IMG/VR virus record: IMGVR_UViG_3300023184_000025
Location: 1 to 64,000 of that record
DNA: 64,000 nucleotides
Direction: 5' to 3' (one strand)
In this document: positions 6,620-25,212 of the stretch, one piece after another
Layout of the letters: each line of letters starts with the position of its first letter
Numbering within the stretch: the stretch's first letter is position 1
Made by a program: the position numbers and the translations under genes
The notes under the pieces: generated by a model
Databases searched by the model: none
The model's input: the letters and a program-made list of their open reading frames with translations, nothing else
What the model was told of the DNA's origin: nothing

Positions 6620-7354
6620 TTATGCTTTTATTAAGGTTACAGTTTTTCTGACTGTGCTTGGACTCACAAGACTAAGCATACTTACAAAAGATTCGTGATC
6701 GTATTCTACAAAAAAGTTTCCATACAAATAACAGTACTCGTCTTTTTTTACCCAATGTGTAAGTGCAGGCCCTAATCTTATTTGCCCTTCGTAGTTTTTT
6801 AAGAAATTAACCAAATAACTTTTTTGTTGTTTGGTTATTTTTCTATCTTTAAAATATAAACGATAAGAATGCTTTGGATTTTTTAATCTAATGGTACCTT
6901 TTGCAAACGCTACATTAATCTGATATACGTGTACATTTTTTATAAACGGTAATTTGGATAATTCTTCTATATATTTTTTATTGTTGGTGTATAGATATCC
7001 ATAGCCGCCTGACTGTATTATTAGTCTTTTGGTATCCGATTCTAACGTATAAAAATTATAGAACGACAATAAATTTTCTTCTACTTCATCACCAATGGGC
7101 AATCCCTCTGATCGGCTGTGCCAGTTTCCTCCCCAATTAACGTGTCTTAGGTGATCTTTGAATTTTTTTCGTTGAGACAAGTTCCAAGAAATCATCTTAC
7201 GATCTTTATCAGGATCATTTTTTAAATTTCTTAGACAAGGTAATTCTTGAAGATAGAAAACAGCCCTATACTCAAATTGATCAAAGTATAGCTGGCTTGA
7301 ATTAACTACTTCAAACTCTGGGTTTGAATTGATCAAGGATAATGTATCCATCAC
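6620..7354 (-). CDS. Hypothetical protein
   Basis: 244-aa ORF downstream of clpA. Confidence 0.6.
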   Translation of the reverse strand: MMDTLSLINSNPEFEVVNSSQLYFDQFEYRAVFYLQELPCLRNLKNDPDKDRKMISWNLSQRKKFKDHLRHVNWGGNWHSRSEGLPIGDEVEENLLSFYNFYTLESDTKRLIIQSGGYGYLYTNNKKYIEELSKLPFIKNVHVYQINVAFAKGTIRLKNPKHSYRLYFKDRKITKQQKSYLVNFLKNYEGQIRLGPALTHWVKKDEYCYLYGNFFVEYDHESFVSMLSLVSPSTVRKTVTLIKA

Positions 7355-9678: not shown

Positions 9679-10470
9679 TTATTTATTTGACTGATCTTTA
9701 AGGATATCTATTATTTCATCTGGAATATGGTCGGGCATGACTGCATTTAATTTAATCATGATATCTCCTGTTGTTCCATTGTTTGAACGCAGACCTAGTC
9801 CTCGTAATCTCAATGTGGTGTTTGGATTAGTCATCGGAGGAACAGTCACTGACATTTCTCTACCTCTAAGGTCTTGTACTACTGCGTCAGTACCGATAAT
9901 TAATTCCCAAAAAGATGCATTGTGTTTGGCATAAAGATCATTGCCTTGTCTTGACCAAATTGGGTGTGGATGGATTCTAAACTGCACAACAAGATCGGAG
10001 TTACCCGGTCCGATACCCGGATAACGTATGTTAGATCCGTCTTCAACGCCTTCGGGTATGTGTATTTCAATTGCTGACGTGCCTAAATTTGATGTCACTG
10101 CTACAGTTCTTGCGCCACCAGTGACTACGTCGTCGAGCTTGATCCATAATGTCATACGTTGAAACGACTGTCTCGGTTGATTAACATTCATCCTAGCGCC
10201 AAACATATTAAAAATAGCATCCATATCAAATGGGTCCTGGCCGGCACCCGGACCACTAGATCTAAAATTAAAATTAGTCTGTGGAGTATCGTATTGTGCT
10301 CGTTTTTCTGGATCACTTAGTGTTCTGTATGCTTCTTCTACTTCTTGAAACTTTTTTGTATCACCACCCTTATCTGGATGGTGCTGGCTGGCCAGCTTAC
10401 GATAAGCTTTTTTAATTTCATCAGCGGCAGCAGTTTTGGGCACACCTAATGTGGCATAGTGATCTGTCAT
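9679..10470 (-). CDS. DnaJ class B (CbpA-like) co-chaperone
   Basis: J-domain with HPD motif, G/F-rich region and DnaJ C-terminal domain; no zinc finger. Confidence 0.9.
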   Translation of the reverse strand: MTDHYATLGVPKTAAADEIKKAYRKLASQHHPDKGGDTKKFQEVEEAYRTLSDPEKRAQYDTPQTNFNFRSSGPGAGQDPFDMDAIFNMFGARMNVNQPRQSFQRMTLWIKLDDVVTGGARTVAVTSNLGTSAIEIHIPEGVEDGSNIRYPGIGPGNSDLVVQFRIHPHPIWSRQGNDLYAKHNASFWELIIGTDAVVQDLRGREMSVTVPPMTNPNTTLRLRGLGLRSNNGTTGDIMIKLNAVMPDHIPDEIIDILKDQSNK

Positions 10471-11471: not shown

Positions 11472-12416
11472 TTAATTTGGATTAGCAAAATAAATGGTAG
11501 CACCCTGTGGCTGTACAGCACGGGCATTGCCATCAGGGAATACTGTTTTAAATTGTGCTACTTGTGCCACTGACAACTGGATGGGTTGTCTAAACAGTAC
11601 CCAAGAAACAATTTGTGGATATGCTTGTTGAGTCAATTGACGCTGTGGATTGCCCCACCATGGACGACTGTTGGCAGGGTTAGTGGTGGCAACACAGGTG
11701 CTATTGGCACCCAGCGTACCAATTGAAATTGGTGCAGTTAATCCGCCACTGTATCTATAACTTGGTGCTGTGTTGAAGTTGGCCATGCCCATCATTGATG
11801 CAATGTTGAAACTGACAGTCTGACCAGAATTTGCACCGCTGGCGTTGGCAGCCGGAATTGCATTAAACACACTGGCCCAGGCAGCATTTGGTGTATTACC
11901 ATTGCCCACCATGCGTTGACCTAATACCAACAAACTGTCAGAGTTACACAATCCATAAGGACCAGTAAAATCTGCCAATTTGAAATAAACAAAGTGTACT
12001 TCTAAATCAGTAACTGAATTATTAATCCAATGCTCTGCTGGTCCATGAAAGTGAAACTCTAGCAAGCAGTATTGAGCACCCCCAAATACAATACCAGGAG
12101 CACATGAACCTGCATTGGGATTGTTGAGTTTGTAGGTACCCCAACGTGTGTTGGCAATAGGATATGCGTTTGCACCAGCAGATGCTGTGGGTAAAGTACA
12201 CACATCACCTGCGCCACTGTTGCAAAATGCGGAATTTAGTGTGTTTTGAGTTGCAAAAGTAAATGTGGCATTTAACCCACTGTAACTGGTAAACTGGGCT
12301 GGGCTACCTTGTGGAGTAGTTGCTGTGATGTTTACTGGTGTTTGGCTCTGAGAATTGACCTGCAATGAAGTTAATCCAAGAATAAAAATTGTAGTTAATA
12401 TTCTAATATATTTCAT
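11472..12416 (-). CDS. Secreted alpha-carbonic anhydrase-like protein
   Basis: Signal peptide; EFHFH..AEH and LEVHFV (three Zn-binding His); YRYSGGLTAP, VSWVLFRQPIQLS and NARAVQP motifs. Confidence 0.82.
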   Translation of the reverse strand: MKYIRILTTIFILGLTSLQVNSQSQTPVNITATTPQGSPAQFTSYSGLNATFTFATQNTLNSAFCNSGAGDVCTLPTASAGANAYPIANTRWGTYKLNNPNAGSCAPGIVFGGAQYCLLEFHFHGPAEHWINNSVTDLEVHFVYFKLADFTGPYGLCNSDSLLVLGQRMVGNGNTPNAAWASVFNAIPAANASGANSGQTVSFNIASMMGMANFNTAPSYRYSGGLTAPISIGTLGANSTCVATTNPANSRPWWGNPQRQLTQQAYPQIVSWVLFRQPIQLSVAQVAQFKTVFPDGNARAVQPQGATIYFANPN

Positions 12417-14993: not shown

Positions 14994-16127
14994 ATGAATG
15001 TTTTGATTCTCACTCCCGACCGTGTTGGCAGTACTCTACTACAACGATTAATCACTGTTTACATGAATGCACACGCATTTGATCAGCCTGTGATTAATTT
15101 ACATGAATTAACCAACGGCATTATGAAGTATTATAGCCCTACATTCAATCAAGAAGTGCTGGGCAAGTTTGAAGACCGACAAAAATGGGGGTATTATCAA
15201 ACTCTTGAAGAAATCACAGAACTTCTTGGCTCAGTTGAACATTATAAAACCACAAGACTAGCACATTATCATATTAAAAAACGACAGGACACTATTGCTA
15301 GTCAAGTTCCTTTTTACGAATACCTAAATCAAAATTTCTACATCATCAGTGCCCAACGAGACAATTTGTTTGAGCATGGACTCAGTTGGTGTATATCAAA
15401 CGAGTCAAAGAAATTAAATGTGTTTAGCCATCAAGAAAAAGTTGATGCATTTTCTAACATTTATAAAAATAAAATCAACGTTGATCCATTGGCGCTGATA
15501 AAATACCTTGACCAGTATGTTGAGTATCTGGCCTGGGTAGACAATCACTTTGACGTTAACTCGTATTTTAAATACGACAAAGATATGTCAAGACTTGAAG
15601 AGTACATACTTGGGCTGTCTATCTTTAGCCAGCAACCAAACAAAAGGTCCTGGAAAGACATCTTTGAACTAGAGTTTGCTGACTGGAACAAGTGTCATTA
15701 CCTAATCAGCGATCTAAGCGGAATCAGCACACAACTACCATCTGTTGACCATCCAAAGTTGACCTATGACGGAAAAGAATCCAACTTTGATAATGTGCAA
15801 CTACAAAGCCTGGCAAGAACAGAGATACCAAAGTCTTTGTCTGTGGTCGATCAACGGTTCTTAATAAAAAATGGCCCAGGGTATCAAAAAGCACACAATG
15901 CTATCAACCAGCTGGTAGAAAACAAAGTACTAGTTACGCCTGTGCCAATAAAACTGCAAACAATGCTGGAAAAGAAGTTATTAATTAATAATTTTTCTCA
16001 GTGTGTTGATGTGTATAACAAATGGTCAGAGTCAACAGGCATGGGTATTCAGTACTCTGATGAAGATATTGAGTTGTCAATAAAAGAAGAAATCAAAACC
16101 TGGCATGCTACTGCTTTGTTAAAGTAA
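14994..16127 (+). CDS. Sulfotransferase-like protein
   Basis: Likely start MNVLIL at 14994; TPDRVGSTLL resembles the 5'-PSB loop; R.NLFE..LSW resembles Stf0-type proteins. Confidence 0.5.
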   Translation: MNVLILTPDRVGSTLLQRLITVYMNAHAFDQPVINLHELTNGIMKYYSPTFNQEVLGKFEDRQKWGYYQTLEEITELLGSVEHYKTTRLAHYHIKKRQDTIASQVPFYEYLNQNFYIISAQRDNLFEHGLSWCISNESKKLNVFSHQEKVDAFSNIYKNKINVDPLALIKYLDQYVEYLAWVDNHFDVNSYFKYDKDMSRLEEYILGLSIFSQQPNKRSWKDIFELEFADWNKCHYLISDLSGISTQLPSVDHPKLTYDGKESNFDNVQLQSLARTEIPKSLSVVDQRFLIKNGPGYQKAHNAINQLVENKVLVTPVPIKLQTMLEKKLLINNFSQCVDVYNKWSESTGMGIQYSDEDIELSIKEEIKTWHATALLK

Positions 16128-16964
16128 CTCTGTAATTTTGTCCACAAAGGCAGAGGCAGTTTTGATATCATAATGATATCCGTCCCGGGCAAGATCTAAT
16201 TTTTCAAATTCAGGAATAAATTGTACATCTGGCAATTGCTCTTGAAACATTGATTTAAAACCAGACGCACAGAAATTTGGAATAACGCTGTGAATTATGT
16301 TGCAGTTGCCTTTGTTTTCTTCTATCTTGTTAATACAATCAATAGTTAATGCTATGTCTGCTTCATCTGTGCTTTTGACAAAATGCAGTTTTAAATCCTC
16401 GTCACTGACGTTTGTCCAAGATTGATCAGAATTTTTTAATTCTTCTTGAATAAAGTTGGGTAGGATATCTATATCAATGACGTTGGGACATGCGGGCCAG
16501 GAAGAATCTTTTACATTGTTATAAAAGTCCTTCCACTTTTTATTTAAGACTGTTTGATATTCATTTTCTCTACGATGCAGATAACTCCAGTGTATGATCA
16601 CCATTTCAGGAACAATTTCTTCAATAACTGTTAATGCTTTTCTTGTAATCCATGAATTACTACCACCGTCCATGCTTACATTTACAATTCTTTGTTTCAA
16701 CTGAGACTGTAGTATATTTGGCCAAGTGTGAGATAACGGGCTTCCAATGCCCACAGTAAAGCTATCACCAATGCACCAAATTGATCTTTTTAAATCTACT
16801 GGCCATTCAGAATCTCTGAAGCCTCGACTGTTGTGTTTGTAATCTACAACAAATTTATATCTAGTAAAATGATTTTTATCTAGTGCCAATTTAATGTTGT
16901 CAATGCCACTGTATTCCCAACGTTGATTTATCCTACTAGGTAAAATAAAATCAGGTAAAATCAC
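16119..16964 (-). CDS. SGNH/GDSL-hydrolase-like protein
   Basis: NSRGFR, CIGDSFTVG, NVSMDGGSN and RDGYH motifs. Confidence 0.65.
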   Translation of the reverse strand: MILPDFILPSRINQRWEYSGIDNIKLALDKNHFTRYKFVVDYKHNSRGFRDSEWPVDLKRSIWCIGDSFTVGIGSPLSHTWPNILQSQLKQRIVNVSMDGGSNSWITRKALTVIEEIVPEMVIIHWSYLHRRENEYQTVLNKKWKDFYNNVKDSSWPACPNVIDIDILPNFIQEELKNSDQSWTNVSDEDLKLHFVKSTDEADIALTIDCINKIEENKGNCNIIHSVIPNFCASGFKSMFQEQLPDVQFIPEFEKLDLARDGYHYDIKTASAFVDKITELL

Positions 16965-17830
16965 TCAAGACCCATGCTCTTACGAATTTTAGTTGCGCTG
17001 ATATCAGTTATTGATGAGTCAAATGACTCTTGTTCAATCTTATAGCCAACATCTCTACCATAGGTAATGTTTACAATGTTAGGTACAACCTGTATTTCAT
17101 ACTGTCCTTGATACAAAGTATCTAAGTCACGCCGTATGAAAGATTTGACTTTTTCAATTTCAAATGGGTTAGAGCCTTGCCACCCTTGACAGTCACGTAT
17201 TTGAATTACCACTTGCCCTGTCTTGGCAATAGCACGTTCAAACAAAGCTCGATGGCCAGCATGCCAGGGCTGCCAACGACCTAACATTTGTACAGTTTCT
17301 TTTTGCCAATCAAACACTGGCCGACGGCGATTTTCTAATATATGCGATCCAATAAACTCAGCCCATTTTTCAGCATTTTGTTCTGTAATTCTAAAGTCAT
17401 ATACTTCAGGCGGAACAAAGGCCTTGTTGGTATCTTCGTAACGGCCTTTATCAATGGTGTCAACCCAGATGGTCCAATCAGCTTTGAAATTGTTGCGCAT
17501 CTCTACCAATGGTGCAACAAAGTCACAGATCACATATTCTCCTGAGCACTCTATGGCAAATTGGAACATACGCAAACTTTGACGAATACGTCCAGCATCA
17601 GAAAAATCCCAATCGTTATACTTTTTACGAATGTCGTCGGCATTGAACCAATCAACACCTACATTCATAAAGTTGGGACCGGGTATTCCTTCATAATTCA
17701 TTACTCGACTGGGATTAATTTTCATTAAATCCCCATTGGTTTCAATATATTGTTTTAGTGCCTGTGCTAGATATGTTTTGCCTGCACCGGGCAAGCCCAT
17801 TATTAAAATACGTTGTGTGCTCATTTCCAT
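16961..17830 (-). CDS. Adenylylsulfate (APS) kinase-like domain fused to an HxGH nucleotidyltransferase domain
   Basis: GLPGAGKT, NADDIR, DFS..GR and DFVAP (CysC-like); C-terminal GRWQPWHAGH and ISATKIR. Confidence 0.78.
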   Translation of the reverse strand: MEMSTQRILIMGLPGAGKTYLAQALKQYIETNGDLMKINPSRVMNYEGIPGPNFMNVGVDWFNADDIRKKYNDWDFSDAGRIRQSLRMFQFAIECSGEYVICDFVAPLVEMRNNFKADWTIWVDTIDKGRYEDTNKAFVPPEVYDFRITEQNAEKWAEFIGSHILENRRRPVFDWQKETVQMLGRWQPWHAGHRALFERAIAKTGQVVIQIRDCQGWQGSNPFEIEKVKSFIRRDLDTLYQGQYEIQVVPNIVNITYGRDVGYKIEQESFDSSITDISATKIRKSMGLE

Positions 17831-18447
17831 TTCCTTGAAGAGTGTTTTGCTAAATCATCTGTGGGATGATAATCCACAGGTTGAAAGTATTTACGATTGG
17901 TATCATCTTGTAAAATTTTATTTAATACTGGGTCTTTAAAATCTATTGGGAATTCCAATTGCTTTGAAATTTGCCGCAAATAATTTTCTTTATAAAGATG
18001 CAGTAACTCATAACTTAGGAATACAGGACTCCATGTTGTTAATTTTTCATATTCTGCCAGTGCTATATCAAATGTGGGTTCGCCGCGCACACGAGTTTCT
18101 TGACAGTTTAATACATTACGATCTCTACCAATGATAGCAATCTTTACCTGTATGCCCAGACCCATTGCAGTGGCAGCAAAACGCACAATATTGGGCACAG
18201 TACGCTCACCGTTCATCATGTACGGTGTACTTACACTGGTCACAAAGTACTTGCATTCACCCCAGACAAACTCTTTTAATAGATCGGGGTTCTCCCAACA
18301 GGCCGCAAAGGGTTCTTGATCATGCCCTATCCAGTATTCGTGTAACAAGGCATGCCATGCATACACATCAGGGTGTAAGGCAAAGATCTTGCTCCATAAA
18401 TGATTTCCCGAACCCTGCGGTCCTGTCAGGATTAACAGAGTTTTCAT
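17821..18447 (-). CDS. Sulfotransferase-like P-loop protein
   Basis: ILTGPQGSGNHLW, IIGRD and LSYELL motifs. Confidence 0.5.
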   Translation of the reverse strand: MKTLLILTGPQGSGNHLWSKIFALHPDVYAWHALLHEYWIGHDQEPFAACWENPDLLKEFVWGECKYFVTSVSTPYMMNGERTVPNIVRFAATAMGLGIQVKIAIIGRDRNVLNCQETRVRGEPTFDIALAEYEKLTTWSPVFLSYELLHLYKENYLRQISKQLEFPIDFKDPVLNKILQDDTNRKYFQPVDYHPTDDLAKHSSRKWK

Positions 18448-19109
18448 CTTGGCAAATGAGCTAGAAATTCTTGTGTGCGATCAGTTATAACGCCTGTTAA
18501 TTGTAGCGTTACTCGGGGATGGTGCCCAGCATTAGCAGTCGAGTGTGGCATGTTGACCCAGTCAAATGTGCTGACATCACCGGAACGCCATTGATTCCAG
18601 TGATGGTTACCATATTCCCAGAACTGTCCAGGTTGCCAGTCTGTGAGCTGAACAAATATACGCATCACACGTGAGGGATCTTCAGGATTCCATTTCTGTA
18701 ATTTATCCATGTGTAGGTTCCAAACTTCCCCAGGCTGTTGCACATGAATACGTTCCATGCAGTCGTCTAGCGCAAACTGGTTGGAAATCTTTTTGAGCGA
18801 CTCGGGCATGTTCCAGTTTAAATGAGTGATAATTATTTTGGGGTCTACACCCACACGCTCTAGATCATATTCTTCTGCCACCAGGTCCTCACGTGGAGGC
18901 AACACACCCTCGCCTTTGTAACCACGTGTTTCCCAGGTGGCCGGCTTGGAATTGGCCACTATGTCAGCAACATCAGCTGACCACGTGGGTTCAATGTGTC
19001 CTAGATGTGCAATTACATCTTCAAAACGATCCAATCTTTTACTATCAAAATGGTATGTGCTGGTGCTTTTGGTGAAATCCCAACTGCTTTTAAATTCGTC
19101 TGTTATCAT
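18444..19109 (-). CDS. 2OG-Fe(II) oxygenase / cupin-fold protein
   Basis: Q.PG...LHMD...PHSTANAG..PR.TLQ (HxD...H, R). Confidence 0.72.
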   Translation of the reverse strand: MITDEFKSSWDFTKSTSTYHFDSKRLDRFEDVIAHLGHIEPTWSADVADIVANSKPATWETRGYKGEGVLPPREDLVAEEYDLERVGVDPKIIITHLNWNMPESLKKISNQFALDDCMERIHVQQPGEVWNLHMDKLQKWNPEDPSRVMRIFVQLTDWQPGQFWEYGNHHWNQWRSGDVSTFDWVNMPHSTANAGHHPRVTLQLTGVITDRTQEFLAHLPR

Positions 19110-19735
19110 ATTACTTTTACCCTTATGTCGTTTACTGCGTACTCTTGTGTGTATTCTGCGGGAGGTGCATCTATGCCCAGGGCCGCAGCCAGTCGTAGAT
19201 TGTTGTCCATTACAGGTTTATCATTGTATTTCCACCATGCGGCCAATATGTCTCGATTCTGGCTGCAAATGATCTGTGCCATGTTCTTTAAGTCTCGAAA
19301 ATACTCATGATAGTCAGGATATGTTATATCAAAATGCCCGCATTTGACCCACCAGCCCAGGCATGCGTCATCATTTCGATGCACAATTACAATGGGTGTT
19401 TCGGGGAATAGGTCGCGCAAATAGTCAATGTGATTTGAGAACACATGACTTTTGATAATACGCACACCCTTGGATTCTTTAAATTGAAATGGCTCAGCAA
19501 ATATTTCTTCTAGTTGCTGTCTGTTTAATGTTGTCAAATCCTCAGGCAGTGGGCTAATCATGCCTGGATCAAAGTACGCACCCAGATGCATGAGTTCCAT
19601 TTTGCCCGATGCATCATGATAGTAAGTCCATTCATCTCTATAGTCCGAACGATCAATGTCAGGACTATAGTAGATGTTTTTGACTACACTACTCCATTTT
19701 GAGCCCGGAGCACCGGCTACAAAGATATATTTCAT
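19106..19735 (-). CDS. Sulfotransferase-like protein
   Basis: FVAGAPGSKWSSV, IIKSH and IVIVHR motifs. Confidence 0.5.
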   Translation of the reverse strand: MKYIFVAGAPGSKWSSVVKNIYYSPDIDRSDYRDEWTYYHDASGKMELMHLGAYFDPGMISPLPEDLTTLNRQQLEEIFAEPFQFKESKGVRIIKSHVFSNHIDYLRDLFPETPIVIVHRNDDACLGWWVKCGHFDITYPDYHEYFRDLKNMAQIICSQNRDILAAWWKYNDKPVMDNNLRLAAALGIDAPPAEYTQEYAVNDIRVKVI

Positions 19736-20715
19736 TCTTTACTTAAATCAATTCGACTCAACACAGGAATAAATGCCGCACGTAATTCGTCCATTTGCTT
19801 TCGAAGCCCTGCAGGAGTCAACTCATCTTCAGCATAGAAAATAACATTGGCTTCTCTGTATTCTGCATATTCTCGGCTACGAACCGCGGCACTAAATTGT
19901 TGTTGATACCAGGCAACAATTTCTCGATCTGTCCCAGGAGGCAATTGTATACTCCAGGCCGCATATACATTGATGCCAGGGGCAATGGTGTTCAACAACG
20001 GGACACCAGGAAACTGTGCCATCTTTTGTGTGCCTGTGAACCCAATAGGCTTTACCTTGCCTGCGTCAACCAGAGATTTGGCCACTGTAATCGGTATAAT
20101 AGCAAATTCAGTACCTGTTTTGCCGTCATAACTTGCGGCACTGGTTACTGCTGGCATAGGGCCGTTGAACCTTACAGGATTAACCATGTCTCTATTGCCT
20201 TTTCCTTTGTCCATCAAGTATTCATATGCTGTGCGATGTGCTCCACCGCCGACTGCAATATTAATTGTTCTGCCTGACTGAATATACTTCACAAACTCCT
20301 GTGGAGTATTAACACCGCTCTTGACACCGGCCACTAATACCAATGGTGATTTGCCCATGGTCAACACATCAATGAATGAGTCGTAATTGTATTTCTTTAT
20401 ATTCTTTTCCCAAATATCATTTGTTACATAACTGCTCATGTGGCTGGGCAAGTTAATAGTATGGCCGTCATTGACTGCTTCCAAAAACCGGTTGTTGGCA
20501 ATAACCGAATCGGCTCCGGGAATGTTTTGCACAACATAAACAAATTTAGGGTTTTGTTTCTGTACAATATCCGCCAGTTTACGAAAGGCCATTTCATTGC
20601 CAGCACCGGGTGTGTTACCAATATACACAGTGACAGGCTTAGTTGGTTCCCATGCGTGAACTAGTGTGCTTGCAGTAACAAGCAATAAAGCAACAAACTT
20701 TTTTAATGTACTCAT
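19732..20715 (-). CDS. Bug/TctC tripartite tricarboxylate transporter substrate-binding protein
   Basis: Signal peptide (AHA-like) then WEPTKPVT...PGAG, V.N.PGA, DGHT and P.VP...PG...W....PPGT. Confidence 0.85.
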   Translation of the reverse strand: MSTLKKFVALLLVTASTLVHAWEPTKPVTVYIGNTPGAGNEMAFRKLADIVQKQNPKFVYVVQNIPGADSVIANNRFLEAVNDGHTINLPSHMSSYVTNDIWEKNIKKYNYDSFIDVLTMGKSPLVLVAGVKSGVNTPQEFVKYIQSGRTINIAVGGGAHRTAYEYLMDKGKGNRDMVNPVRFNGPMPAVTSAASYDGKTGTEFAIIPITVAKSLVDAGKVKPIGFTGTQKMAQFPGVPLLNTIAPGINVYAAWSIQLPPGTDREIVAWYQQQFSAAVRSREYAEYREANVIFYAEDELTPAGLRKQMDELRAAFIPVLSRIDLSKE

Positions 20716-20746
20716 ATTATCTCCTTAAATATACTTAATTAAAAAA

Positions 20747-20777
20747 ACAAGACCAGTAAAATTTTTACAGGTCTTGT
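20747..20777. promoter_or_regulatory. Inverted repeat between the divergent tctC-like and methyltransferase genes
   Basis: ACAAGACC-AGTAAAATTTTTACA-GGTCTTGT. Confidence 0.45.
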
Positions 20778-20808
20778 AAAATTATTTATCTCAAAGGTAA
20801 AATTTTAT

Positions 20809-21534
20809 ATGAATACCAAAATTTTTGACTTATTAACTAAAAATTTGCAGGCCGCCTTTAATTTACCCAAGTATCAGAGAATTCTTGACACCATTGGGCC
20901 GGACACAGAAGTTGACAAACTTCCTTGGACTCCGGCTAGATATCGTAAATTCAAAGACGCTGTGGATGCTGAATTGCAGTTGTCCTGCGATTATGTTGGT
21001 ACATTAAAGAACATAACAGCTGATCTCAGCGAACGTTATATCAATCACTTTTTTGGCGAAATCTGGAAACCCAGAACTGGCGACTATGACTACACAGGCT
21101 GGCAGTTGGCTGAAGAAATTAATCAACTCAATCCACATAGTGTACTAGATGTTGGTTGTGGATATCATCCTTTTAAAGGTCGTATTAACAACGTTGTTGG
21201 TATTGATCCCTATAACAACTGCGCCGATTACATGGTTGACATTCTGGACTATGCTGGTAGTCACGATGTTATTATTGCTTTGGGATCAATTAACTTTAAT
21301 AGTCGTGATGAGATTGAATCACGCTTTGCTAAGTGTGTTGATCTATTAGAATCAGGCGGCAAATTTTATCTACGAGCAAACCCTGGAATCACACACAAAA
21401 CAGGACCATATGTTGACATATTCCCCTGGAGTTTTGAAATAGTCAAAGAGTTTGCTGACAAGTACAAGTTAAAGTTGTTAGAGTTTAAAAAAGACAACAA
21501 CGATAGACTGTACTTTGTGTATTCTAAACCTTGA
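20809..21534 (+). CDS. Class I SAM-dependent methyltransferase with N-terminal ACP-like domain
   Basis: VLDVGCG, VVGIDP and DVIIALGSINF motifs; the N-terminal ~75 aa resemble an acyl carrier protein pattern. Confidence 0.72.
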   Translation: MNTKIFDLLTKNLQAAFNLPKYQRILDTIGPDTEVDKLPWTPARYRKFKDAVDAELQLSCDYVGTLKNITADLSERYINHFFGEIWKPRTGDYDYTGWQLAEEINQLNPHSVLDVGCGYHPFKGRINNVVGIDPYNNCADYMVDILDYAGSHDVIIALGSINFNSRDEIESRFAKCVDLLESGGKFYLRANPGITHKTGPYVDIFPWSFEIVKEFADKYKLKLLEFKKDNNDRLYFVYSKP

Positions 21535-22165
21535 TATCTTTGATTAAATCAAAGGCAGCCAAATGAGCTTGTTCTAAAGGGTGTAGTGTGTTGCTAATAG
21601 GATATCCTTTGACCTGGCTCCACTCTAAGAAATTCTTATCTTCAAACTTGGTCATGTAAGGACGTACATAGTTTTGTAGGTCCATAATTCCTGGCGGTGC
21701 ATGATATTTACTGTCAAAGGTTAAGTCGTCCATGTAGGTCATTATAAATGGACAGTTCTTTTCTTTAAGTGTGTCTATGGCCAAGCGCATACACATTAGA
21801 GTATTGAGTTTATCTCTGTACTCAGAGTGTAGGTTTTTAAAATAAAAAGTAGAATTGGTATCTTTTTCAATAGGGCGTAGTGTTAGCCAATCATCTTTGT
21901 GATCAGTGTGATCAAATCGATCAATCCAGGTCCATCCGATCACAAACAAGCTGTGTTCATTGCAGCCTGCTTGATTTAGCACACGGTCAAGTATGCTGAG
22001 ATTGCCAATGCCTGGGCGGGCATAACAAATATATTGGTAATCTAAATGATTAGCAAGATGTGCGGGCCAGGTTAGTTTACTGGGTGTGGCCCAAAGAGCA
22101 CCATTTCCGTCGTCAGATAAATCTGTTCCAAAAATGAAACTGCACCCAAAGCTTTTGAGTTTCAT
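21524..22165 (-). CDS. SGNH-hydrolase-like protein
   Basis: FGCSFIFG, TWPAHLA, PGIGN and HPLEQAH motifs. Confidence 0.65.
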   Translation of the reverse strand: MKLKSFGCSFIFGTDLSDDGNGALWATPSKLTWPAHLANHLDYQYICYARPGIGNLSILDRVLNQAGCNEHSLFVIGWTWIDRFDHTDHKDDWLTLRPIEKDTNSTFYFKNLHSEYRDKLNTLMCMRLAIDTLKEKNCPFIMTYMDDLTFDSKYHAPPGIMDLQNYVRPYMTKFEDKNFLEWSQVKGYPISNTLHPLEQAHLAAFDLIKDIKV

Positions 22166-22173
22166 AGGTATAG

Positions 22174-22728
22174 TTATATACCAGCGGCGGCCTGTAGACT
22201 GCGAATATCTTTTTCGCGTTCAAAAATTTGTTTTGGTTGAATACCTGCGGCTATGCGCATTTCGTTTAGTCCTGACTCTTTTTCTTTACGATACAGTTTA
22301 GGACTTAGCGGAACTAAGCTATCAAATATTTCTTCAGTAAAAGGGTGCTCTTTTCCTTCGTAGCGCATGGTCCAGTCGTCAGGGCCAAACTCGGTGAGTG
22401 TACTTAAATCGTCAACTAACTCTGCTGTGTGCTTGCCAGAAGTACTACGTCTACGCATTTCTACGTAGACCAGATATCTACCGGCTTTGATTTCTCCTGG
22501 ACTGGTGTCTGAATCCAACACAAAGTCATAGCCTTTTTCAAACCAATTCACAAGATCCTTTGCGGCTTGTTTACTGCGAACAAAAAAGCTTAGTACAATA
22601 ATTTCGTCGTCGTCGCCCATTTTACTAGCAAATTCGTCCACGTGAATTGTGGGCTTCATCATGCCCTCTAGGTCCTTGTACTCAAGGCCTTCAAACAGCG
22701 GCTGGTTGTTGTGCATCTTGTCCTCCAA
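22174..22728 (-). CDS. Hypothetical phage late protein
   Basis: Acidic ORF coupled to the upstream gene; LFE|G near the N-terminus. Confidence 0.6.
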   Translation of the reverse strand: MEDKMHNNQPLFEGLEYKDLEGMMKPTIHVDEFASKMGDDDEIIVLSFFVRSKQAAKDLVNWFEKGYDFVLDSDTSPGEIKAGRYLVYVEMRRRSTSGKHTAELVDDLSTLTEFGPDDWTMRYEGKEHPFTEEIFDSLVPLSPKLYRKEKESGLNEMRIAAGIQPKQIFEREKDIRSLQAAAGI

Positions 22729-23281
22729 TTGCTGGTTGTTGTACGTCGTCTTGCCGGAATTCTTCTTGGTCTAGATCTTCTTCGTAGGCGCTGTCTAGAT
22801 CTTCTAGGTCAATTTGTTCGCCTTCCATCTCAATGGAGCCTGTGCGAATATCAGACATCAATGTCTTGGGCATGACTATTTCAACCAGCCATACTTTTTT
22901 ATCGATTAATCGTGCTTTGTGTGTACCAGGAATGAAATCATCGGGATCCTCAATTTTAATTGGAATCTTTATGTTTTTCTTCATGTATTTTACTTCGCAG
23001 TCAAAGGGAAGTAAACGACGAGCCCCACGTGGGTCGGGCATGAGTTTTTCAGGCCACATAAAAATACAGCCAACTTTGTATTTTCCGATAGTTGGACCTT
23101 GTACTAGTTCACCCAAAATCCAATTTTTAAATGCATAGATATCTAGCTCATCCAGCACACGTTCAAAGTCCAACAGGCTCAACAGACTACCTTCAGACAT
23201 GTAGATGTTTTTAATATTGTCGGCTACCAGCCAGTAATCACTGTGGTCTTTGAAGATATCTTTATCAAGTTTATTGCTCAT
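22691..23281 (-). CDS. Hypothetical phage late protein
   Basis: 196 aa with an MPDPRG motif and acidic tail; TAAATA 5 nt before the ATG. Confidence 0.65.
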   Translation of the reverse strand: MSNKLDKDIFKDHSDYWLVADNIKNIYMSEGSLLSLLDFERVLDELDIYAFKNWILGELVQGPTIGKYKVGCIFMWPEKLMPDPRGARRLLPFDCEVKYMKKNIKIPIKIEDPDDFIPGTHKARLIDKKVWLVEIVMPKTLMSDIRTGSIEMEGEQIDLEDLDSAYEEDLDQEEFRQDDVQQPAIGGQDAQQPAAV

Positions 23282-24225: not shown

Positions 24226-25212
24226 ATGATTAAAATAGACCAAATCCGTGCATTACACATTGAACTTAGTTCTCGTTGCAATGCACGATGTCCCATGTGT
24301 ATGCGTAACTACCGGGGCGTGGATTTTAATGGAGGGTATCCGTTGACTGAGTTGTCACTCAGTGATATTCAACACATATTCCCTTCACACTTTTTAAAAC
24401 AAATTAACCGTATTAACTTTAACGGAAATCTTGGAGATTTTAGTCTGGCCAGCGATGCGTTGGAAATAGTTGACTACTTTTTATCTAATAGTACTGCTCA
24501 AATACAGATTGAAACAAATGGTAGTACACGTTCTACTGCCTGGTGGCAGAAATTAAACAACCATCGAATTAAAGTATTATTTGCATTAGACGGACTCAAA
24601 GACACACACAATCTGTACCGTCAGAACACTGATTGGGAAAAAATAATAGATAATGCTGTGGCGTTAATCCAATCAGGCGGAAATGCTGTTTGGAAATTTA
24701 TTCCGTTTAAACATAACCAACATCAATTTAATAGTTGTCAGACACTGAGCCGTCAGTTGGGATTTTCAGATTTTACAGTACGAGATCAGGGACGTAATCA
24801 AGGACCGGTATTTACAAGAAACGGCGAGTTTAGTCATTGGCTTGGCGATGCACAATCTGACATACCCGATTCTAATGCTTTAATTGAAGATCATTTGACC
24901 TGGTTTGATTATAAAAAGAAAATTCCCTGGGTTAATGATAATGCACAAATAGATTGTGGCCATATAAAACAAAAAGAGATTTATATAGCTGCCGACGGAT
25001 CTGTGTATCCTTGTTGTTATCTGGGATATTTTCCAAAGACAATGCATCAACCAGGAAACAGTCAATTTAAAGATCTTGTCAAAGAAAACAATGCATTAGA
25101 ATACAGTCTAGAGCATTGCATTGATTGGTTTGACCAGGTAGAAAAAACCTGGACTTTACCCAGTGTGGCACAGGGTAAGTTGTATACGTGTGTTAGTGCC
25201 TGCGGACACTAA
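24226..25212 (+). CDS. Radical SAM protein with SPASM/twitch-like C-terminus
   Basis: CNARCPMC, ETNG, FALDG and ADGSVYPCC...C..ACG motifs. Confidence 0.88.
   Translation: MIKIDQIRALHIELSSRCNARCPMCMRNYRGVDFNGGYPLTELSLSDIQHIFPSHFLKQINRINFNGNLGDFSLASDALEIVDYFLSNSTAQIQIETNGSTRSTAWWQKLNNHRIKVLFALDGLKDTHNLYRQNTDWEKIIDNAVALIQSGGNAVWKFIPFKHNQHQFNSCQTLSRQLGFSDFTVRDQGRNQGPVFTRNGEFSHWLGDAQSDIPDSNALIEDHLTWFDYKKKIPWVNDNAQIDCGHIKQKEIYIAADGSVYPCCYLGYFPKTMHQPGNSQFKDLVKENNALEYSLEHCIDWFDQVEKTWTLPSVAQGKLYTCVSACGH

What the first reader, a model, noticed from the sequence alone, without database searches (positions are those of the whole stretch)
14994..22165. Self-contained sulfation/tailoring cluster with a solute-binding protein
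One operon encodes TctC-like binding protein, sulfotransferase-like protein, 2OG-Fe(II) oxygenase, a second sulfotransferase-like protein, APS-kinase/HxGH fusion and an SGNH protein, all coupled by overlapping start/stop codons. It is flanked by a divergent ACP-like-methyltransferase, another sulfotransferase-like gene and another SGNH gene. This looks like a small biosynthetic pathway (donor synthesis, hydroxylation, sulfation, methylation, acylation) and matches no phage pathway I can name. Possible products are a modified host surface glycan/lipid, a virion glycan or a small molecule. The sulfotransferase calls rest on weak N-terminal loop motifs.
Basis: partly seen in the sequence, partly recalled or inferred. 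Interest (0 to 1): 0.8.

Follow-up and report, generated by a model that had tools for sequence, protein, structure and literature searches.

The report
Phage hydroxylation–sulfation–methylation gene cassette
A large uncultured lake phage carries a tightly linked gene set (a periplasmic solute-binding protein, a sulfotransferase, an iron/2-oxoglutarate hydroxylase and a methyltransferase, plus helper genes) that recurs in hundreds of freshwater phage contigs and probably decorates an unknown molecule with hydroxyl, sulfate and methyl groups.

Summary
Confirmed calls: a TctC-type binding protein with a signal peptide, a sulfotransferase-family protein (g6), a 2OG/Fe(II) oxygenase (g5), an APS-kinase domain fused to an HxGH nucleotidyltransferase (g3) and a class I SAM methyltransferase (g8). 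The two SGNH calls are weak but agree with each other. The second and third "sulfotransferases" (g4, g1) stay unproven, and "ACP-like" has no support.

The nine genes are not conserved as a block. In 80 related viral loci, found through g6, the core is methyltransferase | binding protein > sulfotransferase > hydroxylase. The rest is accessory. Fusion proteins link the core partners: sulfotransferase::methyltransferase in relatives, sulfotransferase+hydroxylase in bacteria. Some relatives add the TctA permease.

The cluster is not self-contained. No recognisable ATP sulfurylase lies in the cluster or among the window genes scanned, and the window has no permease. g3 also lies beside unrelated, bona fide sulfotransferases in other phages, which fits a role in donor supply.

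The acceptor is unknown. I favour an imported carboxylate. Protein or glycan targets remain serious rivals. The closest description is a 2010 comparative-genomics prediction for bacteria. No cultured phage in the collection searched carries the cassette.

The parts
14994..16127 (+). g1, 377 aa, function unknown. Accessory gene, always convergent with g2. Its N-terminal 'TPDRVGSTLLQR' loop and an 'R-x-N-x-x-E-x-x-L-S-W' stretch resemble sulfotransferase PAPS-binding motifs. That resemblance is my reading only.
   Evidence: 1559 homologues, none with a Pfam domain. Pfam scan of 53 members, PDB profile search and hhalign against sulfotransferase profiles were all negative. Present in 17 of 80 loci.
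16119..16964 (-). g2, 281 aa, SGNH/GDSL-like hydrolase or acyltransferase. Last gene of the operon, GTG start.
   Evidence: Lipase_GDSL 18.6 bits, below the 23.6 cutoff. A GDS block and a C-terminal DGYH are visible in the translation. hhalign to the g9 family gives 95%. Present in 19 of 80 loci.
16961..17830 (-). g3, 289 aa fusion. N-terminal APS-kinase family domain (about residues 1-170, with a 23-residue insert) plus a C-terminal HxGH / ISxTxxR nucleotidyltransferase domain nearest to NadM-type NMN adenylyltransferases.
   Evidence: A family profile against the PDB hits adenylyl-sulfate kinases or the kinase domains of bifunctional PAPS-synthesis enzymes in 16 of the top 17 places (best 2yvu, E 1.2e-12). 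The NadM enzyme 2qjt scores E 7e-7 on the C-domain. phrog_10255 E 9e-46. Present in 41 of 80 cassette loci. At least 578 viral loci overall, 17 of 39 well-flanked ones with a sulfotransferase-type gene within four genes.
17821..18447 (-). g4, 208 aa, P-loop-like 'TGPQGSGNH' protein. Possible second sulfotransferase-fold enzyme, unproven.
   Evidence: Only Atlas language-model and neighbour-structure leads point to sulfotransferase families. hhalign against g6, the PDB profile search, the Pfam scan of members and a homologue search (2699 homologues, none annotated) gave nothing. Present in 36 of 80 loci.
18444..19109 (-). g5, 221 aa, 2-oxoglutarate/Fe(II) oxygenase with a double-stranded beta-helix. 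Invariant H133-x-D135, H189 and R199.
   Evidence: Alignment of 29 sequences. AlphaFold model pLDDT 83.7. VIA Z 13.5 to proline 3-hydroxylase 1e5r, Z 11-12 to PHD2, PiuC and L-proline cis-4-hydroxylase. AFDB neighbours are PhyH, JmjC and Asp/Asn hydroxylase families. Present in 78 of 80 loci.
19106..19735 (-). g6, 209 aa, sulfotransferase-family protein. Invariant 'GAPGSKWSS', 'RIIKSH' and 'HRxDDxCLGWW' stretches. My reading: these correspond to the 5'-phosphosulfate loop, the catalytic His and the 3'-phosphate motif.
   Evidence: Sulfotransfer_3 26.0 bits (cutoff 27) and Sulfotransfer_1 16.6 bits. Alignment A1. Atlas feature and structure neighbours are Sulfotransfer_3 families. 330 clusters at 50% identity, including fusions to g8-like methyltransferase domains. 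One 190-nt contig from a lake metatranscriptome covers 19473-19657 with 2 mismatches.
19732..20715 (-). g7, 327 aa, TctC/Bug-type periplasmic solute-binding protein of the tripartite tricarboxylate transporter family, with a Sec signal peptide. First gene of the operon.
   Evidence: PF03401 66.8 bits. PDB hits to TphC/terephthalate-binding proteins (E 9e-9), Bug27 and BugD. The signal peptide is visible in the translation. Present in 75 of 80 loci. Relatives L010, L075, L081 and L109 carry TctA (E 1e-83) plus a divergent TctC-like gene at this position.
20716..20808 (.). 93-bp AT-rich divergent intergenic region between g7 and g8. Presumed bidirectional promoter region.
   Evidence: Sequence read. 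Only one weak sigma-70-like match, on the + strand, and the scan as a whole is not above the shuffled expectation.
20809..21534 (+). g8, 241 aa, class I SAM-dependent methyltransferase with an N-terminal four-helix domain. Motif I is 'VLDVGCGYHP'. Core gene, transcribed divergently.
   Evidence: Alignment A3 has mean identity 79%. Model pLDDT 84. Foldseek matches SAM methyltransferases 3e8s, ChlM, NodS and anthraquinone or monolignol O-methyltransferases. AFDB and Atlas neighbours agree. Present in 74 of 80 loci. Fused to g6-like domains in P0132, P0136, P0139, P0169, P0198 and P0204.
21524..22165 (-). g9, 213 aa, second SGNH-like protein ('GCSFIFG' block I, C-terminal 'LHPxxxxH'). Last gene of the upstream operon with two small virion proteins (22174-23281).
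   Evidence: No Pfam, PHROG or NCBIfam hit. hhalign to the g2 family 95%, E 1.7e-8 over 78 columns. Present in 26 of 80 loci. The neighbours match virion structural PHROGs 13138 and 12928.

Best explanation
This is an auxiliary tailoring module of uncultured freshwater jumbo phages. Its conserved core has four genes. A Sec-exported TTT-family binding protein (g7), a PAPS-type sulfotransferase (g6) and a 2OG/Fe(II) hydroxylase (g5) are translated from one coupled message. A class I SAM methyltransferase (g8) is read divergently.

Proposed mechanism, all inferred:
1. In the infected Gram-negative cell, g7 captures a carboxylate-bearing small molecule (amino-acid-like or aromatic acid) in the periplasm.
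2. g7 hands it to a TctA/TctB permease. The host supplies this here; some relatives encode their own TctA.
3. In the cytoplasm, g5 installs a hydroxyl group.
4. g6 sulfates it and g8 methylates it or a neighbouring group.

In this phage the core is extended. g3's APS-kinase domain would turn host-made APS into PAPS, or 3'-phosphorylate a related nucleotide donor made by its own nucleotidyltransferase domain. The other extensions are a possible second sulfotransferase-fold enzyme (g4), an SGNH esterase/acyltransferase-like protein (g2) and the unknown g1.

Shown: the family or fold of g7, g5, g8 and the g3 kinase domain, the probable family of g6, the operon structure, the synteny, and the domain fusions. 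Inferred: the acceptor, the order of steps, the donor, and the benefit to the phage.
For: - Operon with 4-10 nt overlaps.
- Core order methyltransferase | TctC > sulfotransferase > hydroxylase in about 70 of 80 loci. The sulfotransferase falls to 60% identity across them, forming 54 clusters at 90%. At least four different flanking contexts occur, on contigs of about 100-524 kb.
- All 24 loci found through the hydroxylase also carry the sulfotransferase.
- Fusions: sulfotransferase::methyltransferase proteins, and a 618-member family of about 600-aa bacterial proteins carrying Sulfotransfer_3 and Asp_Arg_Hydrox together.
- The transporter link holds in another architecture: TctA > TctC-like > sulfotransferase::methyltransferase with overlapping genes. 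TctA is also present in L010, L075 and L081.
- Leaning toward a small molecule: g5's best structural neighbours are free-proline hydroxylases. g8's neighbours are small-molecule methyltransferases. A Peptidase_C26/glutamine-amidotransferase-type hydrolase is inserted in 29 of 80 loci. g6 has no extra substrate-docking domain.
- Donor supply: g3's N-domain is APS-kinase family. g3 lies within four genes of a sulfotransferase-type gene in 17 of 39 well-flanked loci. These genes come from unrelated families, including one with Sulfotransfer_3 at 64 bits.
Against: - No acceptor is identified, and nothing was tested biochemically.
- g6 scores 1 bit under Pfam's threshold, and I had no structure model of my own for it.
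- The window has no TctA/TctB and no recognisable ATP sulfurylase was found in it, so both uptake and donor synthesis depend on the host.
- g5 also resembles protein prolyl hydroxylases (PHD2, P4H-EF-Tu) almost as well as it resembles free-proline hydroxylases.
- The bacterial neighbourhoods with the same enzyme mix were predicted to modify proteins.
- In other phages g3 sits among glycan-type tailoring genes (GT25, FkbM methyltransferase, carbamoyltransferase) next to neck genes.
- In Casjensviridae g3 sits beside NADAR and MazG with no sulfotransferase.
- Only 41 of 80 cassettes carry g3.
- The 80 loci were found through g6, so conservation is conditional on g6.
Confidence: 0.4

Rival explanations
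1. Protein-modification system. g5 hydroxylates Pro, Asp or Asn residues of a phage or host protein (for example a tail fibre or collagen-like protein, or a translation factor). g6 sulfates the new hydroxyl or a tyrosine, and g8 methylates. The binding protein is either a target or an unrelated passenger.
For: Iyer et al. 2010 (PMC2938197) described bacterial operons of beta-hydroxylase, PhyH::methyltransferase and sulfotransferase, often with PAPS synthetase and acetyltransferase. They proposed co-encoded phage-tail-collar or collagen-like proteins as substrates. Bacterial Sulfotransfer_3 proteins carrying TPR repeats or an Asp/Asn-hydroxylase domain are structural neighbours. g5 matches PHD2 and the P4H-EF-Tu complex. 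In 39 of 80 loci the cassette lies next to small virion proteins. Collagen-like ORFs lie a few genes downstream in L014 and L031.
Against: The window has no Gly-X-Y repeat, and collagen-like ORFs occur in only 2 of 80 loci. g6, g5 and g8 are small single-domain proteins without TPR or other docking domains. This reading does not explain the invariant, translationally coupled TctC gene or the TctA gene in relatives.
Confidence: 0.2
2. Glycan or lipid tailoring of the host envelope or of a virion glycan, in the manner of Nod-factor or O-antigen decoration: sulfation (g6, g4, g1), methylation (g8), O-acyl handling (g2, g9), with g3 supplying PAPS.
For: Two SGNH-like genes are present. One of g8's structural neighbours is the NodS N-methyltransferase. 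In other phages g3 lies among a bona fide sulfotransferase, an FkbM/RfbT-type methyltransferase, a family-25 LPS glycosyltransferase and a NodU-type carbamoyltransferase, next to neck protein genes.
Against: The window's cluster has no glycosyltransferase, flippase or sugar-nucleotide gene. A 2OG hydroxylase and a TTT binding protein are not usual parts of glycan decoration. The glycan-type partners accompany g3, which is accessory, and not the four-gene core.
Confidence: 0.15
3. No common pathway. The genes are separate auxiliary metabolic genes that travel together: g7 boosts nutrient uptake and g3 is an NAD-type nucleotide enzyme. Any sulfotransferase, hydroxylase and methyltransferase activities act on different targets.
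For: g3 is mostly found away from this cassette: at least 578 loci, with 30 of 39 well-flanked ones lacking g6, g4, g5 and g1. In Casjensviridae it sits beside NADAR. The phage also encodes NAD synthase at 44110-44943. Bug27, a structurally solved relative of g7, is reported to bind nicotinate (my recollection; Bug27 is hit).
Against: The 4-nt overlaps TctC>sulfotransferase (35 of 57) and sulfotransferase>hydroxylase (62 of 72) persist across divergent phages. Sulfotransferase::methyltransferase and sulfotransferase+hydroxylase fusions exist. The core stays together while its flanks change.
Confidence: 0.1
4. Post-replicative DNA hypermodification: a base is hydroxylated, then activated or decorated by sulfation or methylation.
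For: Phages are known to hypermodify bases through hydroxymethyl intermediates and P-loop kinases (my knowledge). A radical SAM gene lies 3 kb away.
Against: g5 is not TET/JBP-like; its neighbours are prolyl, aspartyl and phytanoyl-type hydroxylases. No DNA-binding, glycosylase-fold or hydroxymethylase partner was seen in the genes I scanned. The radical SAM gene is present in only 12 of 80 loci. A periplasmic binding protein makes no sense here.
Confidence: 0.03

Closest known systems
Bacterial beta-hydroxylase / PhyH::methyltransferase / sulfotransferase / PAPS-synthetase gene neighbourhoods predicted by Iyer, Abhiman, de Souza and Aravind 2010 (NAR, PMC2938197)
   Same: The enzyme mix is the same: a 2OG/Fe(II) hydroxylase of the prolyl/aspartyl-hydroxylase kind, P-loop sulfotransferases, a SAM methyltransferase, a PAPS-supply gene and an acyl-handling enzyme. 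The logic is also the same: hydroxylate, then sulfate or methylate the hydroxyl. Sulfotransferase and hydroxylase are fused in a 618-member bacterial family.
   Different: Those operons are bacterial and predicted only, never assayed as far as I found. They carry tail-collar or collagen-like proteins as proposed substrates and have no TTT binding protein. Here the cassette is viral, the invariant non-enzymatic partner is TctC (sometimes with TctA), the methyltransferase is not fused to a PhyH domain, and a full PAPS synthetase is replaced by an APS-kinase::HxGH fusion.
Bifunctional PAPS synthase (ATP sulfurylase + APS kinase) and CysC
   Same: g3's N-domain belongs to the APS-kinase family: P-loop, D-x-x-R, F-S-x-x-G-R and F-x-x-P stretches align with solved APS kinases. 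Like PAPS synthase, g3 fuses this kinase to a nucleotidyltransferase of the HxxH superfamily.
   Different: The partner domain is a 110-aa NadM/cytidylyltransferase-like HxGH domain, not an ATP sulfurylase. The domain order is kinase first. Sulfate activation is therefore not shown.
Campylobacter jejuni O-methyl phosphoramidate donor pathway (Cj1415-Cj1418)
   Same: That pathway uses a cytidylyltransferase, a gamma-glutamyl-CDP-amidate hydrolase and a 3'-kinase to build a 3'-phosphorylated, PAPS-like donor. Here g3 offers a nucleotidyltransferase plus an APS-kinase-like domain. The Peptidase_C26 gene inserted in 29 of 80 relatives has that hydrolase family as its best NCBIfam hit (E 6.8e-20, next family 2.4e-10). 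A SAM methyltransferase is also present.
   Different: No glutamine-kinase homologue was seen. The hydrolase hit is far below the family cutoff (72 bits against 250), the gene is absent from this window, and it often occurs without g3. That Cj1415 is an APS-kinase homologue is my recollection; the primary papers were not held.
Tripartite tricarboxylate transporters (TctCBA; Bug proteins, TphC, AdpC)
   Same: g7 has the TctC domain, a signal peptide, and matches to solved TTT binding proteins. Some relatives encode TctA next to it.
   Different: The gene is phage-borne and translationally coupled to cytoplasmic tailoring enzymes rather than to TctB/TctA. The ligand is unknown. I found only one earlier mention of a TTT component in viruses, a tctA domain hit.
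Rhizobial Nod-factor tailoring genes (NodH sulfotransferase, NodPQ PAPS synthesis, NodS methyltransferase, NodL/NodU acyl and carbamoyl transfer) - from my own knowledge
   Same: One cluster combines PAPS supply, sulfotransfer, methylation and acyl handling. NodS is among g8's structural neighbours. A NodU-type carbamoyltransferase accompanies g3 in other phages.
   Different: The cassette has no chitin-oligosaccharide synthesis genes and no glycosyltransferase. A hydroxylase and a binding protein belong to the core.
Sulfotransferases listed as viral auxiliary metabolic genes in metagenome surveys
   Same: Pfam-level sulfotransferase hits on viral contigs have been reported before.
   Different: Those are single-gene listings, with no partners, conservation analysis or mechanism.

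Membership tests
Sulfotransferase (Pfam Sulfotransfer_3 / Sulfotransfer_1) - g6 | Profile match above the curated threshold | tested here: inconclusive
   Sulfotransfer_3 26.0 bits against a cutoff of 27, E 1.3e-5. Sulfotransfer_1 16.6 bits against 22. Profile against PDB sequences: no hit.
Sulfotransferase (Pfam Sulfotransfer_3 / Sulfotransfer_1) - g6 | Sulfotransferase fold with a 5'-phosphosulfate loop, a catalytic His/base and a 3'-phosphate motif | tested here: inconclusive
   The stretches GAPGSKWSS, RIIKSH and HRxDDxCLGWW are invariant. Equating them with the PAPS motifs is my reading. The structure of the nearest Atlas cluster (not of g6 itself) aligns to Sulfotransfer_3 families at TM 0.56-0.66. 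No model of g6 was made.
Sulfotransferase - g4 and g1 | Any profile or fold match to sulfotransferases | tested here: not met
   g4 has Atlas leads only, with nothing from hhalign, PDB, Pfam or the homologue search. g1 gave nothing. Neither was modelled, so the fold question stays open.
2OG/Fe(II)-dependent oxygenase - g5 | Double-stranded beta-helix fold | tested here: met
   Model pLDDT 83.7. VIA Z 13.5-11 to proline hydroxylases, PHD2, PiuC and SnoN. Foldseek and AFDB agree.
2OG/Fe(II)-dependent oxygenase - g5 | HxD/E...H iron triad and a basic residue about 10 positions after the distal His for the 2OG carboxylate | tested here: met
   H133, D135, H189 and R199 are invariant in 29 sequences. 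Their placement on the barrel strands follows the model's secondary structure. Metal and 2OG binding were not tested.
TTT solute-binding protein (TctC/Bug) - g7 | TctC domain and export signal | tested here: met
   PF03401 66.8 bits. Ten solved TTT binding proteins are hit. An N-terminal hydrophobic signal ends in VHA|WEP.
Complete TTT transporter (TctC + TctB + TctA) | Membrane components encoded alongside | tested here: not met
   No TctA or TctB in the cluster. TctA is present only in relatives L010, L075, L081 and L109.
APS kinase (CysC) - g3 N-domain | Profile match and substrate-binding motifs beyond the P-loop | tested here: met
   16 of the top 17 PDB profile hits are adenylyl-sulfate kinases or the kinase domains of bifunctional PAPS-synthesis enzymes (E 1.2e-12 to 3e-6), aligned over profile positions 6-100, including the D-x-x-R, F-S..R and F-x-x-P stretches. 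Pfam APS_kinase 23.3 bits against a cutoff of 21.1. Activity on APS cannot be tested here.
Bifunctional PAPS synthase - g3 | ATP sulfurylase domain | tested here: not met
   The C-domain matches NadM-type NMN adenylyltransferases and CTP_transf_like, not ATP sulfurylase.
SGNH/GDSL hydrolase - g2, g9 | Profile match and the block I Ser and block V His | tested here: inconclusive
   g2 scores 18.6 and 18.0 bits, both under the cutoffs, over block I only. g9 has no hit but is related to g2 (hhalign 95%). The motifs are seen by eye.
Class I SAM methyltransferase - g8 | Rossmann-like methyltransferase fold with the glycine-rich motif I | tested here: met
   Model pLDDT 84. 904 PDB matches at E <= 0.001, led by SAM methyltransferases. 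VLDVGCG and GIDP are invariant. Pfam alone is weak (13.3 bits).
Acyl carrier protein-like domain - g8 N-terminus | PP-binding profile and a conserved Ser for phosphopantetheine | tested here: not met
   No PP-binding hit. The invariant residues of the N-terminal domain (L38, P39, W40, T41, P42) include no serine motif.
Iyer et al. 2010 hydroxylase-sulfotransferase-methyltransferase neighbourhoods | Co-encoded tail-collar or collagen-like substrate protein | tested here: not met
   The window has no Gly-X-Y repeats. They occur in only 2 of 80 related loci. Tail-collar domains were not searched for specifically.
C. jejuni MeOPN donor pathway | Glutamine kinase, cytidylyltransferase, gamma-glutamyl-CDP-amidate hydrolase and 3'-kinase together | tested here: not met
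   A hydrolase-like gene is found only in relatives, at 72 bits against a cutoff of 250. No glutamine-kinase-like gene was seen. The kinase and nucleotidyltransferase are present as g3.

The most novel reading that the evidence does not exclude
g3 is a minimal, self-sufficient donor synthase. Its HxGH domain joins a nucleotide monophosphate to sulfate or to another phospho or amido group, and its APS-kinase domain adds the 3'-phosphate. The product is PAPS or a PAPS-like donor, as in the Campylobacter phosphoramidate pathway. The sulfotransferase-fold proteins (g6, g4, perhaps g1) then transfer that group to a hydroxyl made by g5 on a molecule that the phage itself has the cell import through g7. 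This would be a virus-encoded 'import, hydroxylate, decorate' pathway making a new metabolite, possibly with a group other than sulfate.
Probability: 0.15. Interest if true: 0.85.

Novelty: new variant of a known kind. Interest (0 to 1): 0.6.

Why it matters
The component families are abundant in lake viromes. The sulfotransferase has at least 271 viral loci, g3 at least 578, the g4 family 2699 protein clusters and the g1 family 1559. None has a known function.

The synteny and the domain fusions reduce the problem to one testable unit of four small soluble proteins. A phage that supplies its own periplasmic binding protein for a cytoplasmic hydroxylation/sulfation/methylation route would be a new kind of viral metabolic takeover. 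It would also give the first function for viral 'sulfotransferase' auxiliary genes, which surveys currently just list.

If g3 makes PAPS or a PAPS-like donor on its own, it would be a new and very compact solution to donor activation. If the target turns out to be virion or host proteins, it would be the first experimental handle on the hydroxylate-then-sulfate systems predicted for bacteria in 2010.

Tried and rejected
- Nucleotide similarity to deposited phages: none.
- tblastn of g6, g7, g5 and g8 against deposited phages: only marginal hits to uncultured marine viruses, one faecal contig and a cyanophage 2OG oxygenase. No cultured carrier and no host.
- Paralogy among g6, g4 and g1, and between g2 and g9, by BLASTP: none. 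By hhalign only g2~g9 and TctC~c97 are related. A broad sulfotransferase profile from 89 representatives still does not reach g4 or g1.
- PDB sequence-profile searches for g6, g5, g8, g4 and g1: nothing meaningful.
- Pfam scans of g1 and g4 family members: noise. The large homologue searches for g1 and g4 returned only unannotated proteins.
- Defence-system library: nothing relevant.
- Promoter/terminator scan: not above the shuffled expectation. No tRNAs in the window.
- Bacterial genomes: the only two hits are phage-like contigs syntenic with the window, binned in a Haliscomenobacter MAG. This is a weak host hint at best, and TTT binding proteins point rather to Proteobacteria (my inference).
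- Collagen-like substrate in the window: none.
- I first counted g3 as unlinked to sulfation, because 30 of 39 g3 loci lack g6, g4, g5 and g1. I revised this after finding other, bona fide sulfotransferases beside g3.
- The primary papers on the Campylobacter kinase could not be read.
- Metatranscriptome support is one short contig only. DNA carry-over cannot be excluded.

Full report
**Where the window comes from.** The window is identical over this region to a 345-kb IMG/VR contig. Its locus is held by lake and freshwater metagenomes from twelve studies, five of them holding more than a third of its sampled words. Neighbouring genes are typical of a large tailed phage of a Gram-negative host:
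- a Clp-like ATPase, DnaJ, a holin-like gene, an endolysin and spanin-like genes;
- two small virion proteins, PhoH, a radical SAM enzyme and a clamp loader.

No deposited phage resembles the region at the DNA level.

**Observation.** The ORF map shows a minus-strand operon running g7 (19732-20715) > g6 (19106-19735) > g5 (18444-19109) > g4 (17821-18447) > g3 (16961-17830) > g2 (16119-16964). Successive genes overlap by 4, 4, 4, 10 and 4 nt. g1 (14994-16127, plus strand; the ATG at 14994 was read) converges on g2. g8 (20809-21534) diverges from g7 across 93 bp. g9 (21524-22165) converges on g8 and closes the upstream operon of two virion proteins.

**What each gene is.**
- g7 is a TctC/Bug-type binding protein: PF03401 at 66.8 bits, matches to TphC, Bug27 and BugD, and a Sec signal peptide.
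- g6 scores 26.0 bits on Sulfotransfer_3, one bit under threshold. Three stretches are invariant in 25 relatives, and I read them as the phosphosulfate loop, the catalytic His and the 3'-phosphate motif. Its ESM Atlas neighbours, by features and by the structure of the nearest cluster, are sulfotransferase families.
- g5 has no sequence-level hit. Its model (pLDDT 83.7) is a double-stranded beta-helix with Z 13.5 to proline 3-hydroxylase and Z 11-12 to PHD2, PiuC and L-proline cis-4-hydroxylase. AFDB neighbours are PhyH, JmjC and Asp/Asn-hydroxylase families. H133-x-D135, H189 and R199 are invariant.
- g8 models (pLDDT 84) as a class I SAM methyltransferase behind a four-helix N-terminal domain. 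Its nearest structures are small-molecule methyltransferases. Nothing supports 'ACP-like'.
- g3 is a fusion. A family profile hits adenylyl-sulfate kinases, or the kinase domains of bifunctional PAPS-synthesis enzymes, in 16 of the top 17 PDB places (best E 1.2e-12), well beyond the P-loop. The C-terminal 110 residues match NadM-type NMN adenylyltransferases (E 7e-7) and carry HxGH and ISxTxxR.
- g2 is a weak GDSL hit. g9 is related to it by profile comparison.
- g4 has only Atlas leads to sulfotransferases.
- g1 has nothing beyond an N-terminal loop resemblance. Profile, fold-library and homologue searches were all negative.
- None of g6, g4 or g1 has a canonical GK[S/T] Walker A motif.

**Conservation.** A scan of viral contigs with g6 found 271 relatives. 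I analysed the best 80.
- g5 is present in 78, g7 in 75 and g8 in 74.
- g3 is in 41, g4 in 36, g9 in 26, g2 in 19 and g1 in 17.
- Gene-order maps show an invariant core, methyltransferase | TctC > sulfotransferase > hydroxylase, in at least four different flanking contexts, on contigs of about 100 to 524 kb.
- Sulfotransferase > hydroxylase overlap by 4 nt in 62 of 72 cases, and TctC > sulfotransferase in 35 of 57. The sulfotransferases form 54 clusters at 90% identity.
- All 24 loci found independently through g5 carry g6.
- Optional inserts include a Peptidase_C26/amidotransferase-type hydrolase (29 loci), a weak ferritin-like protein (18 loci), a second TctC with an unknown 396-aa protein, and extra methyltransferase-like genes.
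- L010, L075 and L081 carry TctA plus a divergent TctC-like gene at the g7 position. Pfam confirmed TctA on the L081 representative (E 1e-83).

So the nine-gene set is not a unit, but the four-gene core clearly is.

**Independent links between the core partners.**
- An exhaustive profile search with g6 (330 clusters at E <= 0.001) returned proteins in which a g6-like domain is fused to a g8-like methyltransferase domain: P0132, P0136, P0139, P0169, P0198 and P0204.
- P0132 sits in the arrangement TctA > TctC-like > sulfotransferase::methyltransferase, with overlapping genes.
- A fold search of the g5 model in the ESM Atlas hit a 618-member family of about 600-aa proteins from Pseudomonadota that carry Sulfotransfer_3 and Asp_Arg_Hydrox in one chain.

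These fusions argue that transporter, sulfotransferase, hydroxylase and methyltransferase serve one process.

**Donor supply.**
- No recognisable ATP sulfurylase is present, so 'self-contained' does not hold.
- g3 is far more widespread than the cassette, with at least 578 viral loci. In Casjensviridae it sits beside NADAR and MazG with no sulfotransferase.
- Of 39 g3 loci with flanks on both sides, 30 lack g6, g4, g5 and g1.
- However, 17 of those 39 have some sulfotransferase-type gene within four genes. Ten of these belong to other families: one is a bona fide sulfotransferase (Sulfotransfer_3 at 64 bits), the other was recognised only by its PRSGST loop motif. They are often accompanied by an FkbM/RfbT-type methyltransferase, a family-25 glycosyltransferase or a NodU-type carbamoyltransferase, next to neck genes.

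Recurrent adjacency to unrelated sulfotransferases is the best evidence that g3 feeds sulfotransferase-fold enzymes. It leaves open whether the donor is PAPS made from host APS or a PAPS-like nucleotide built by g3's own transferase domain.

The second option is prompted by the Campylobacter phosphoramidate pathway. There a cytidylyltransferase, a gamma-glutamyl-CDP-amidate hydrolase and a 3'-kinase make CDP-phosphoramidate 3'-phosphate. The Peptidase_C26 insert of the relatives has that hydrolase family as its best NCBIfam hit by ten orders of magnitude, although far below the family cutoff.

**What the cassette acts on.**
- For an imported small carboxylate: the obligatory TTT binding protein and occasional TctA, free-proline hydroxylases as g5's best neighbours, small-molecule methyltransferases as g8's, the amidotransferase-type hydrolase insert, and the absence of docking domains.
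- For a protein target: the closest published description. Iyer et al. 2010 found bacterial operons of beta-hydroxylase, PhyH::methyltransferase, sulfotransferase, PAPS synthetase and acetyltransferase. They proposed co-encoded tail-collar or collagen-like proteins as substrates that are hydroxylated and then sulfated. g5 resembles protein prolyl hydroxylases nearly as well, and the cassette often abuts virion genes. Against this, the window has no collagen-like repeat, and only 2 of 80 loci have one nearby.
- For a glycan target: the SGNH genes and the company g3 keeps elsewhere.

I rank the small-molecule reading first (0.4), protein second (0.2) and glycan third (0.15).

**Expression and host.** One 190-nt contig of a lake metatranscriptome matches g6 with two mismatches. 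This is a hint, not proof, of transcription. The only hits in bacterial genomes are two phage-like contigs binned with a Haliscomenobacter MAG. The signal peptide, the spanin-like genes and the TTT protein point to a Gram-negative host. The expansion of TTT binding proteins in Betaproteobacteria (my knowledge) would suggest that group, but this was not tested.

**Novelty.** Viral sulfotransferases have been listed as auxiliary genes, and tctA was once noted as a domain hit on a viral contig. The enzyme combination has been predicted in bacteria. I found no description of the phage cassette, of its TTT partner, or of the kinase::nucleotidyltransferase fusion as a sulfotransferase companion. It is a new variant of a known kind. 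It is well defined genetically, and its chemistry is entirely untested.

Noticed in passing
window 11472-12416 (-): A 314-aa protein with a eukaryotic-type (alpha) carbonic anhydrase domain (PF00194, 57.9 bits). It lies between a holin-like gene and the lysis genes, which is unusual for a phage. Relatives were seen in only 5 of 80 loci.
   Followed up: no
window 44110-44943 (-): NAD synthase (NadE; PF02540, 167 bits). Together with the NMN-adenylyltransferase-like domain of g3, it raises the possibility that g3 serves NAD-type nucleotide metabolism instead.
   Followed up: partly
window 7311-9602 (-) and 9679-10470 (-): A 763-aa Clp-like double-AAA ATPase (phrog_4871, 795 bits) next to a full DnaJ: a phage-encoded chaperone/unfoldase pair.
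   Followed up: no
window 24226-25212 (+): A radical SAM protein whose best NCBIfam hits are SPASM-type maturases, with a weak viperin hit in the defence library. It sits beside PhoH and is present in only 12 of 80 related loci.
   Followed up: no
L107 and L108 (NZ_JBBAKG010000049.1, NZ_JBBAKG010000036.1): Two contigs of a Haliscomenobacter MAG are syntenic with this phage over 20 kb, including virion, lysis and cassette genes. They are either mis-binned phage contigs or a host hint. L108 lacks the hydroxylase.
   Followed up: partly
L014:12965-14494, L014:16770-17877, L031:13137-13904: One relative carries a second hydroxylase-like gene followed by a second methyltransferase-like gene on the same strand. 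Collagen-like Gly-X-Y ORFs lie a few genes downstream in two relatives. In L014 the repeat is followed by a protein that I read, from its first residues only, as tail-fibre-like.
   Followed up: partly
L117-L155 (for example L152:5301-6674, L163:4153-4971, L133:4057-4794, L142:7317-8012, L174:5972-7453): In other lake phages, g3 homologues sit in a different tailoring cluster next to T4-type neck genes. The cluster has a bona fide sulfotransferase, a second PRSGST-loop protein, an FkbM/RfbT-type methyltransferase, a GT25 glycosyltransferase, a NodU-type carbamoyltransferase and an RCC1-repeat protein.
   Followed up: partly
window 17020-17387 (the g3 nucleotidyltransferase domain): In one lake metagenome the summed contig depth over this segment reaches about 950 (bin mean), and up to about 1780 at single positions. 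The rest of the locus sits at about 40, and the extra depth comes from divergent contigs. Much more abundant phages in that lake therefore carry a conserved version of this domain.
   Followed up: no
L014:10624-10848, L031:12754-12978, L187:3828-4052: A conserved 74-aa protein (starting MNKYH[VI]RFNT) recurs directly after the sulfotransferase or after g3 in several lineages: 3 loci of the g6 set and 8 of the g3 set. It has no annotation. It could be a small partner or a substrate.
   Followed up: no
window 37107-40766 (-): A 1219-aa, 16% glycine protein with only marginal PHROG hits. It lies in the structural region beside a 1049-aa protein with tail-fibre-like hits (31512-34661).
   Followed up: no
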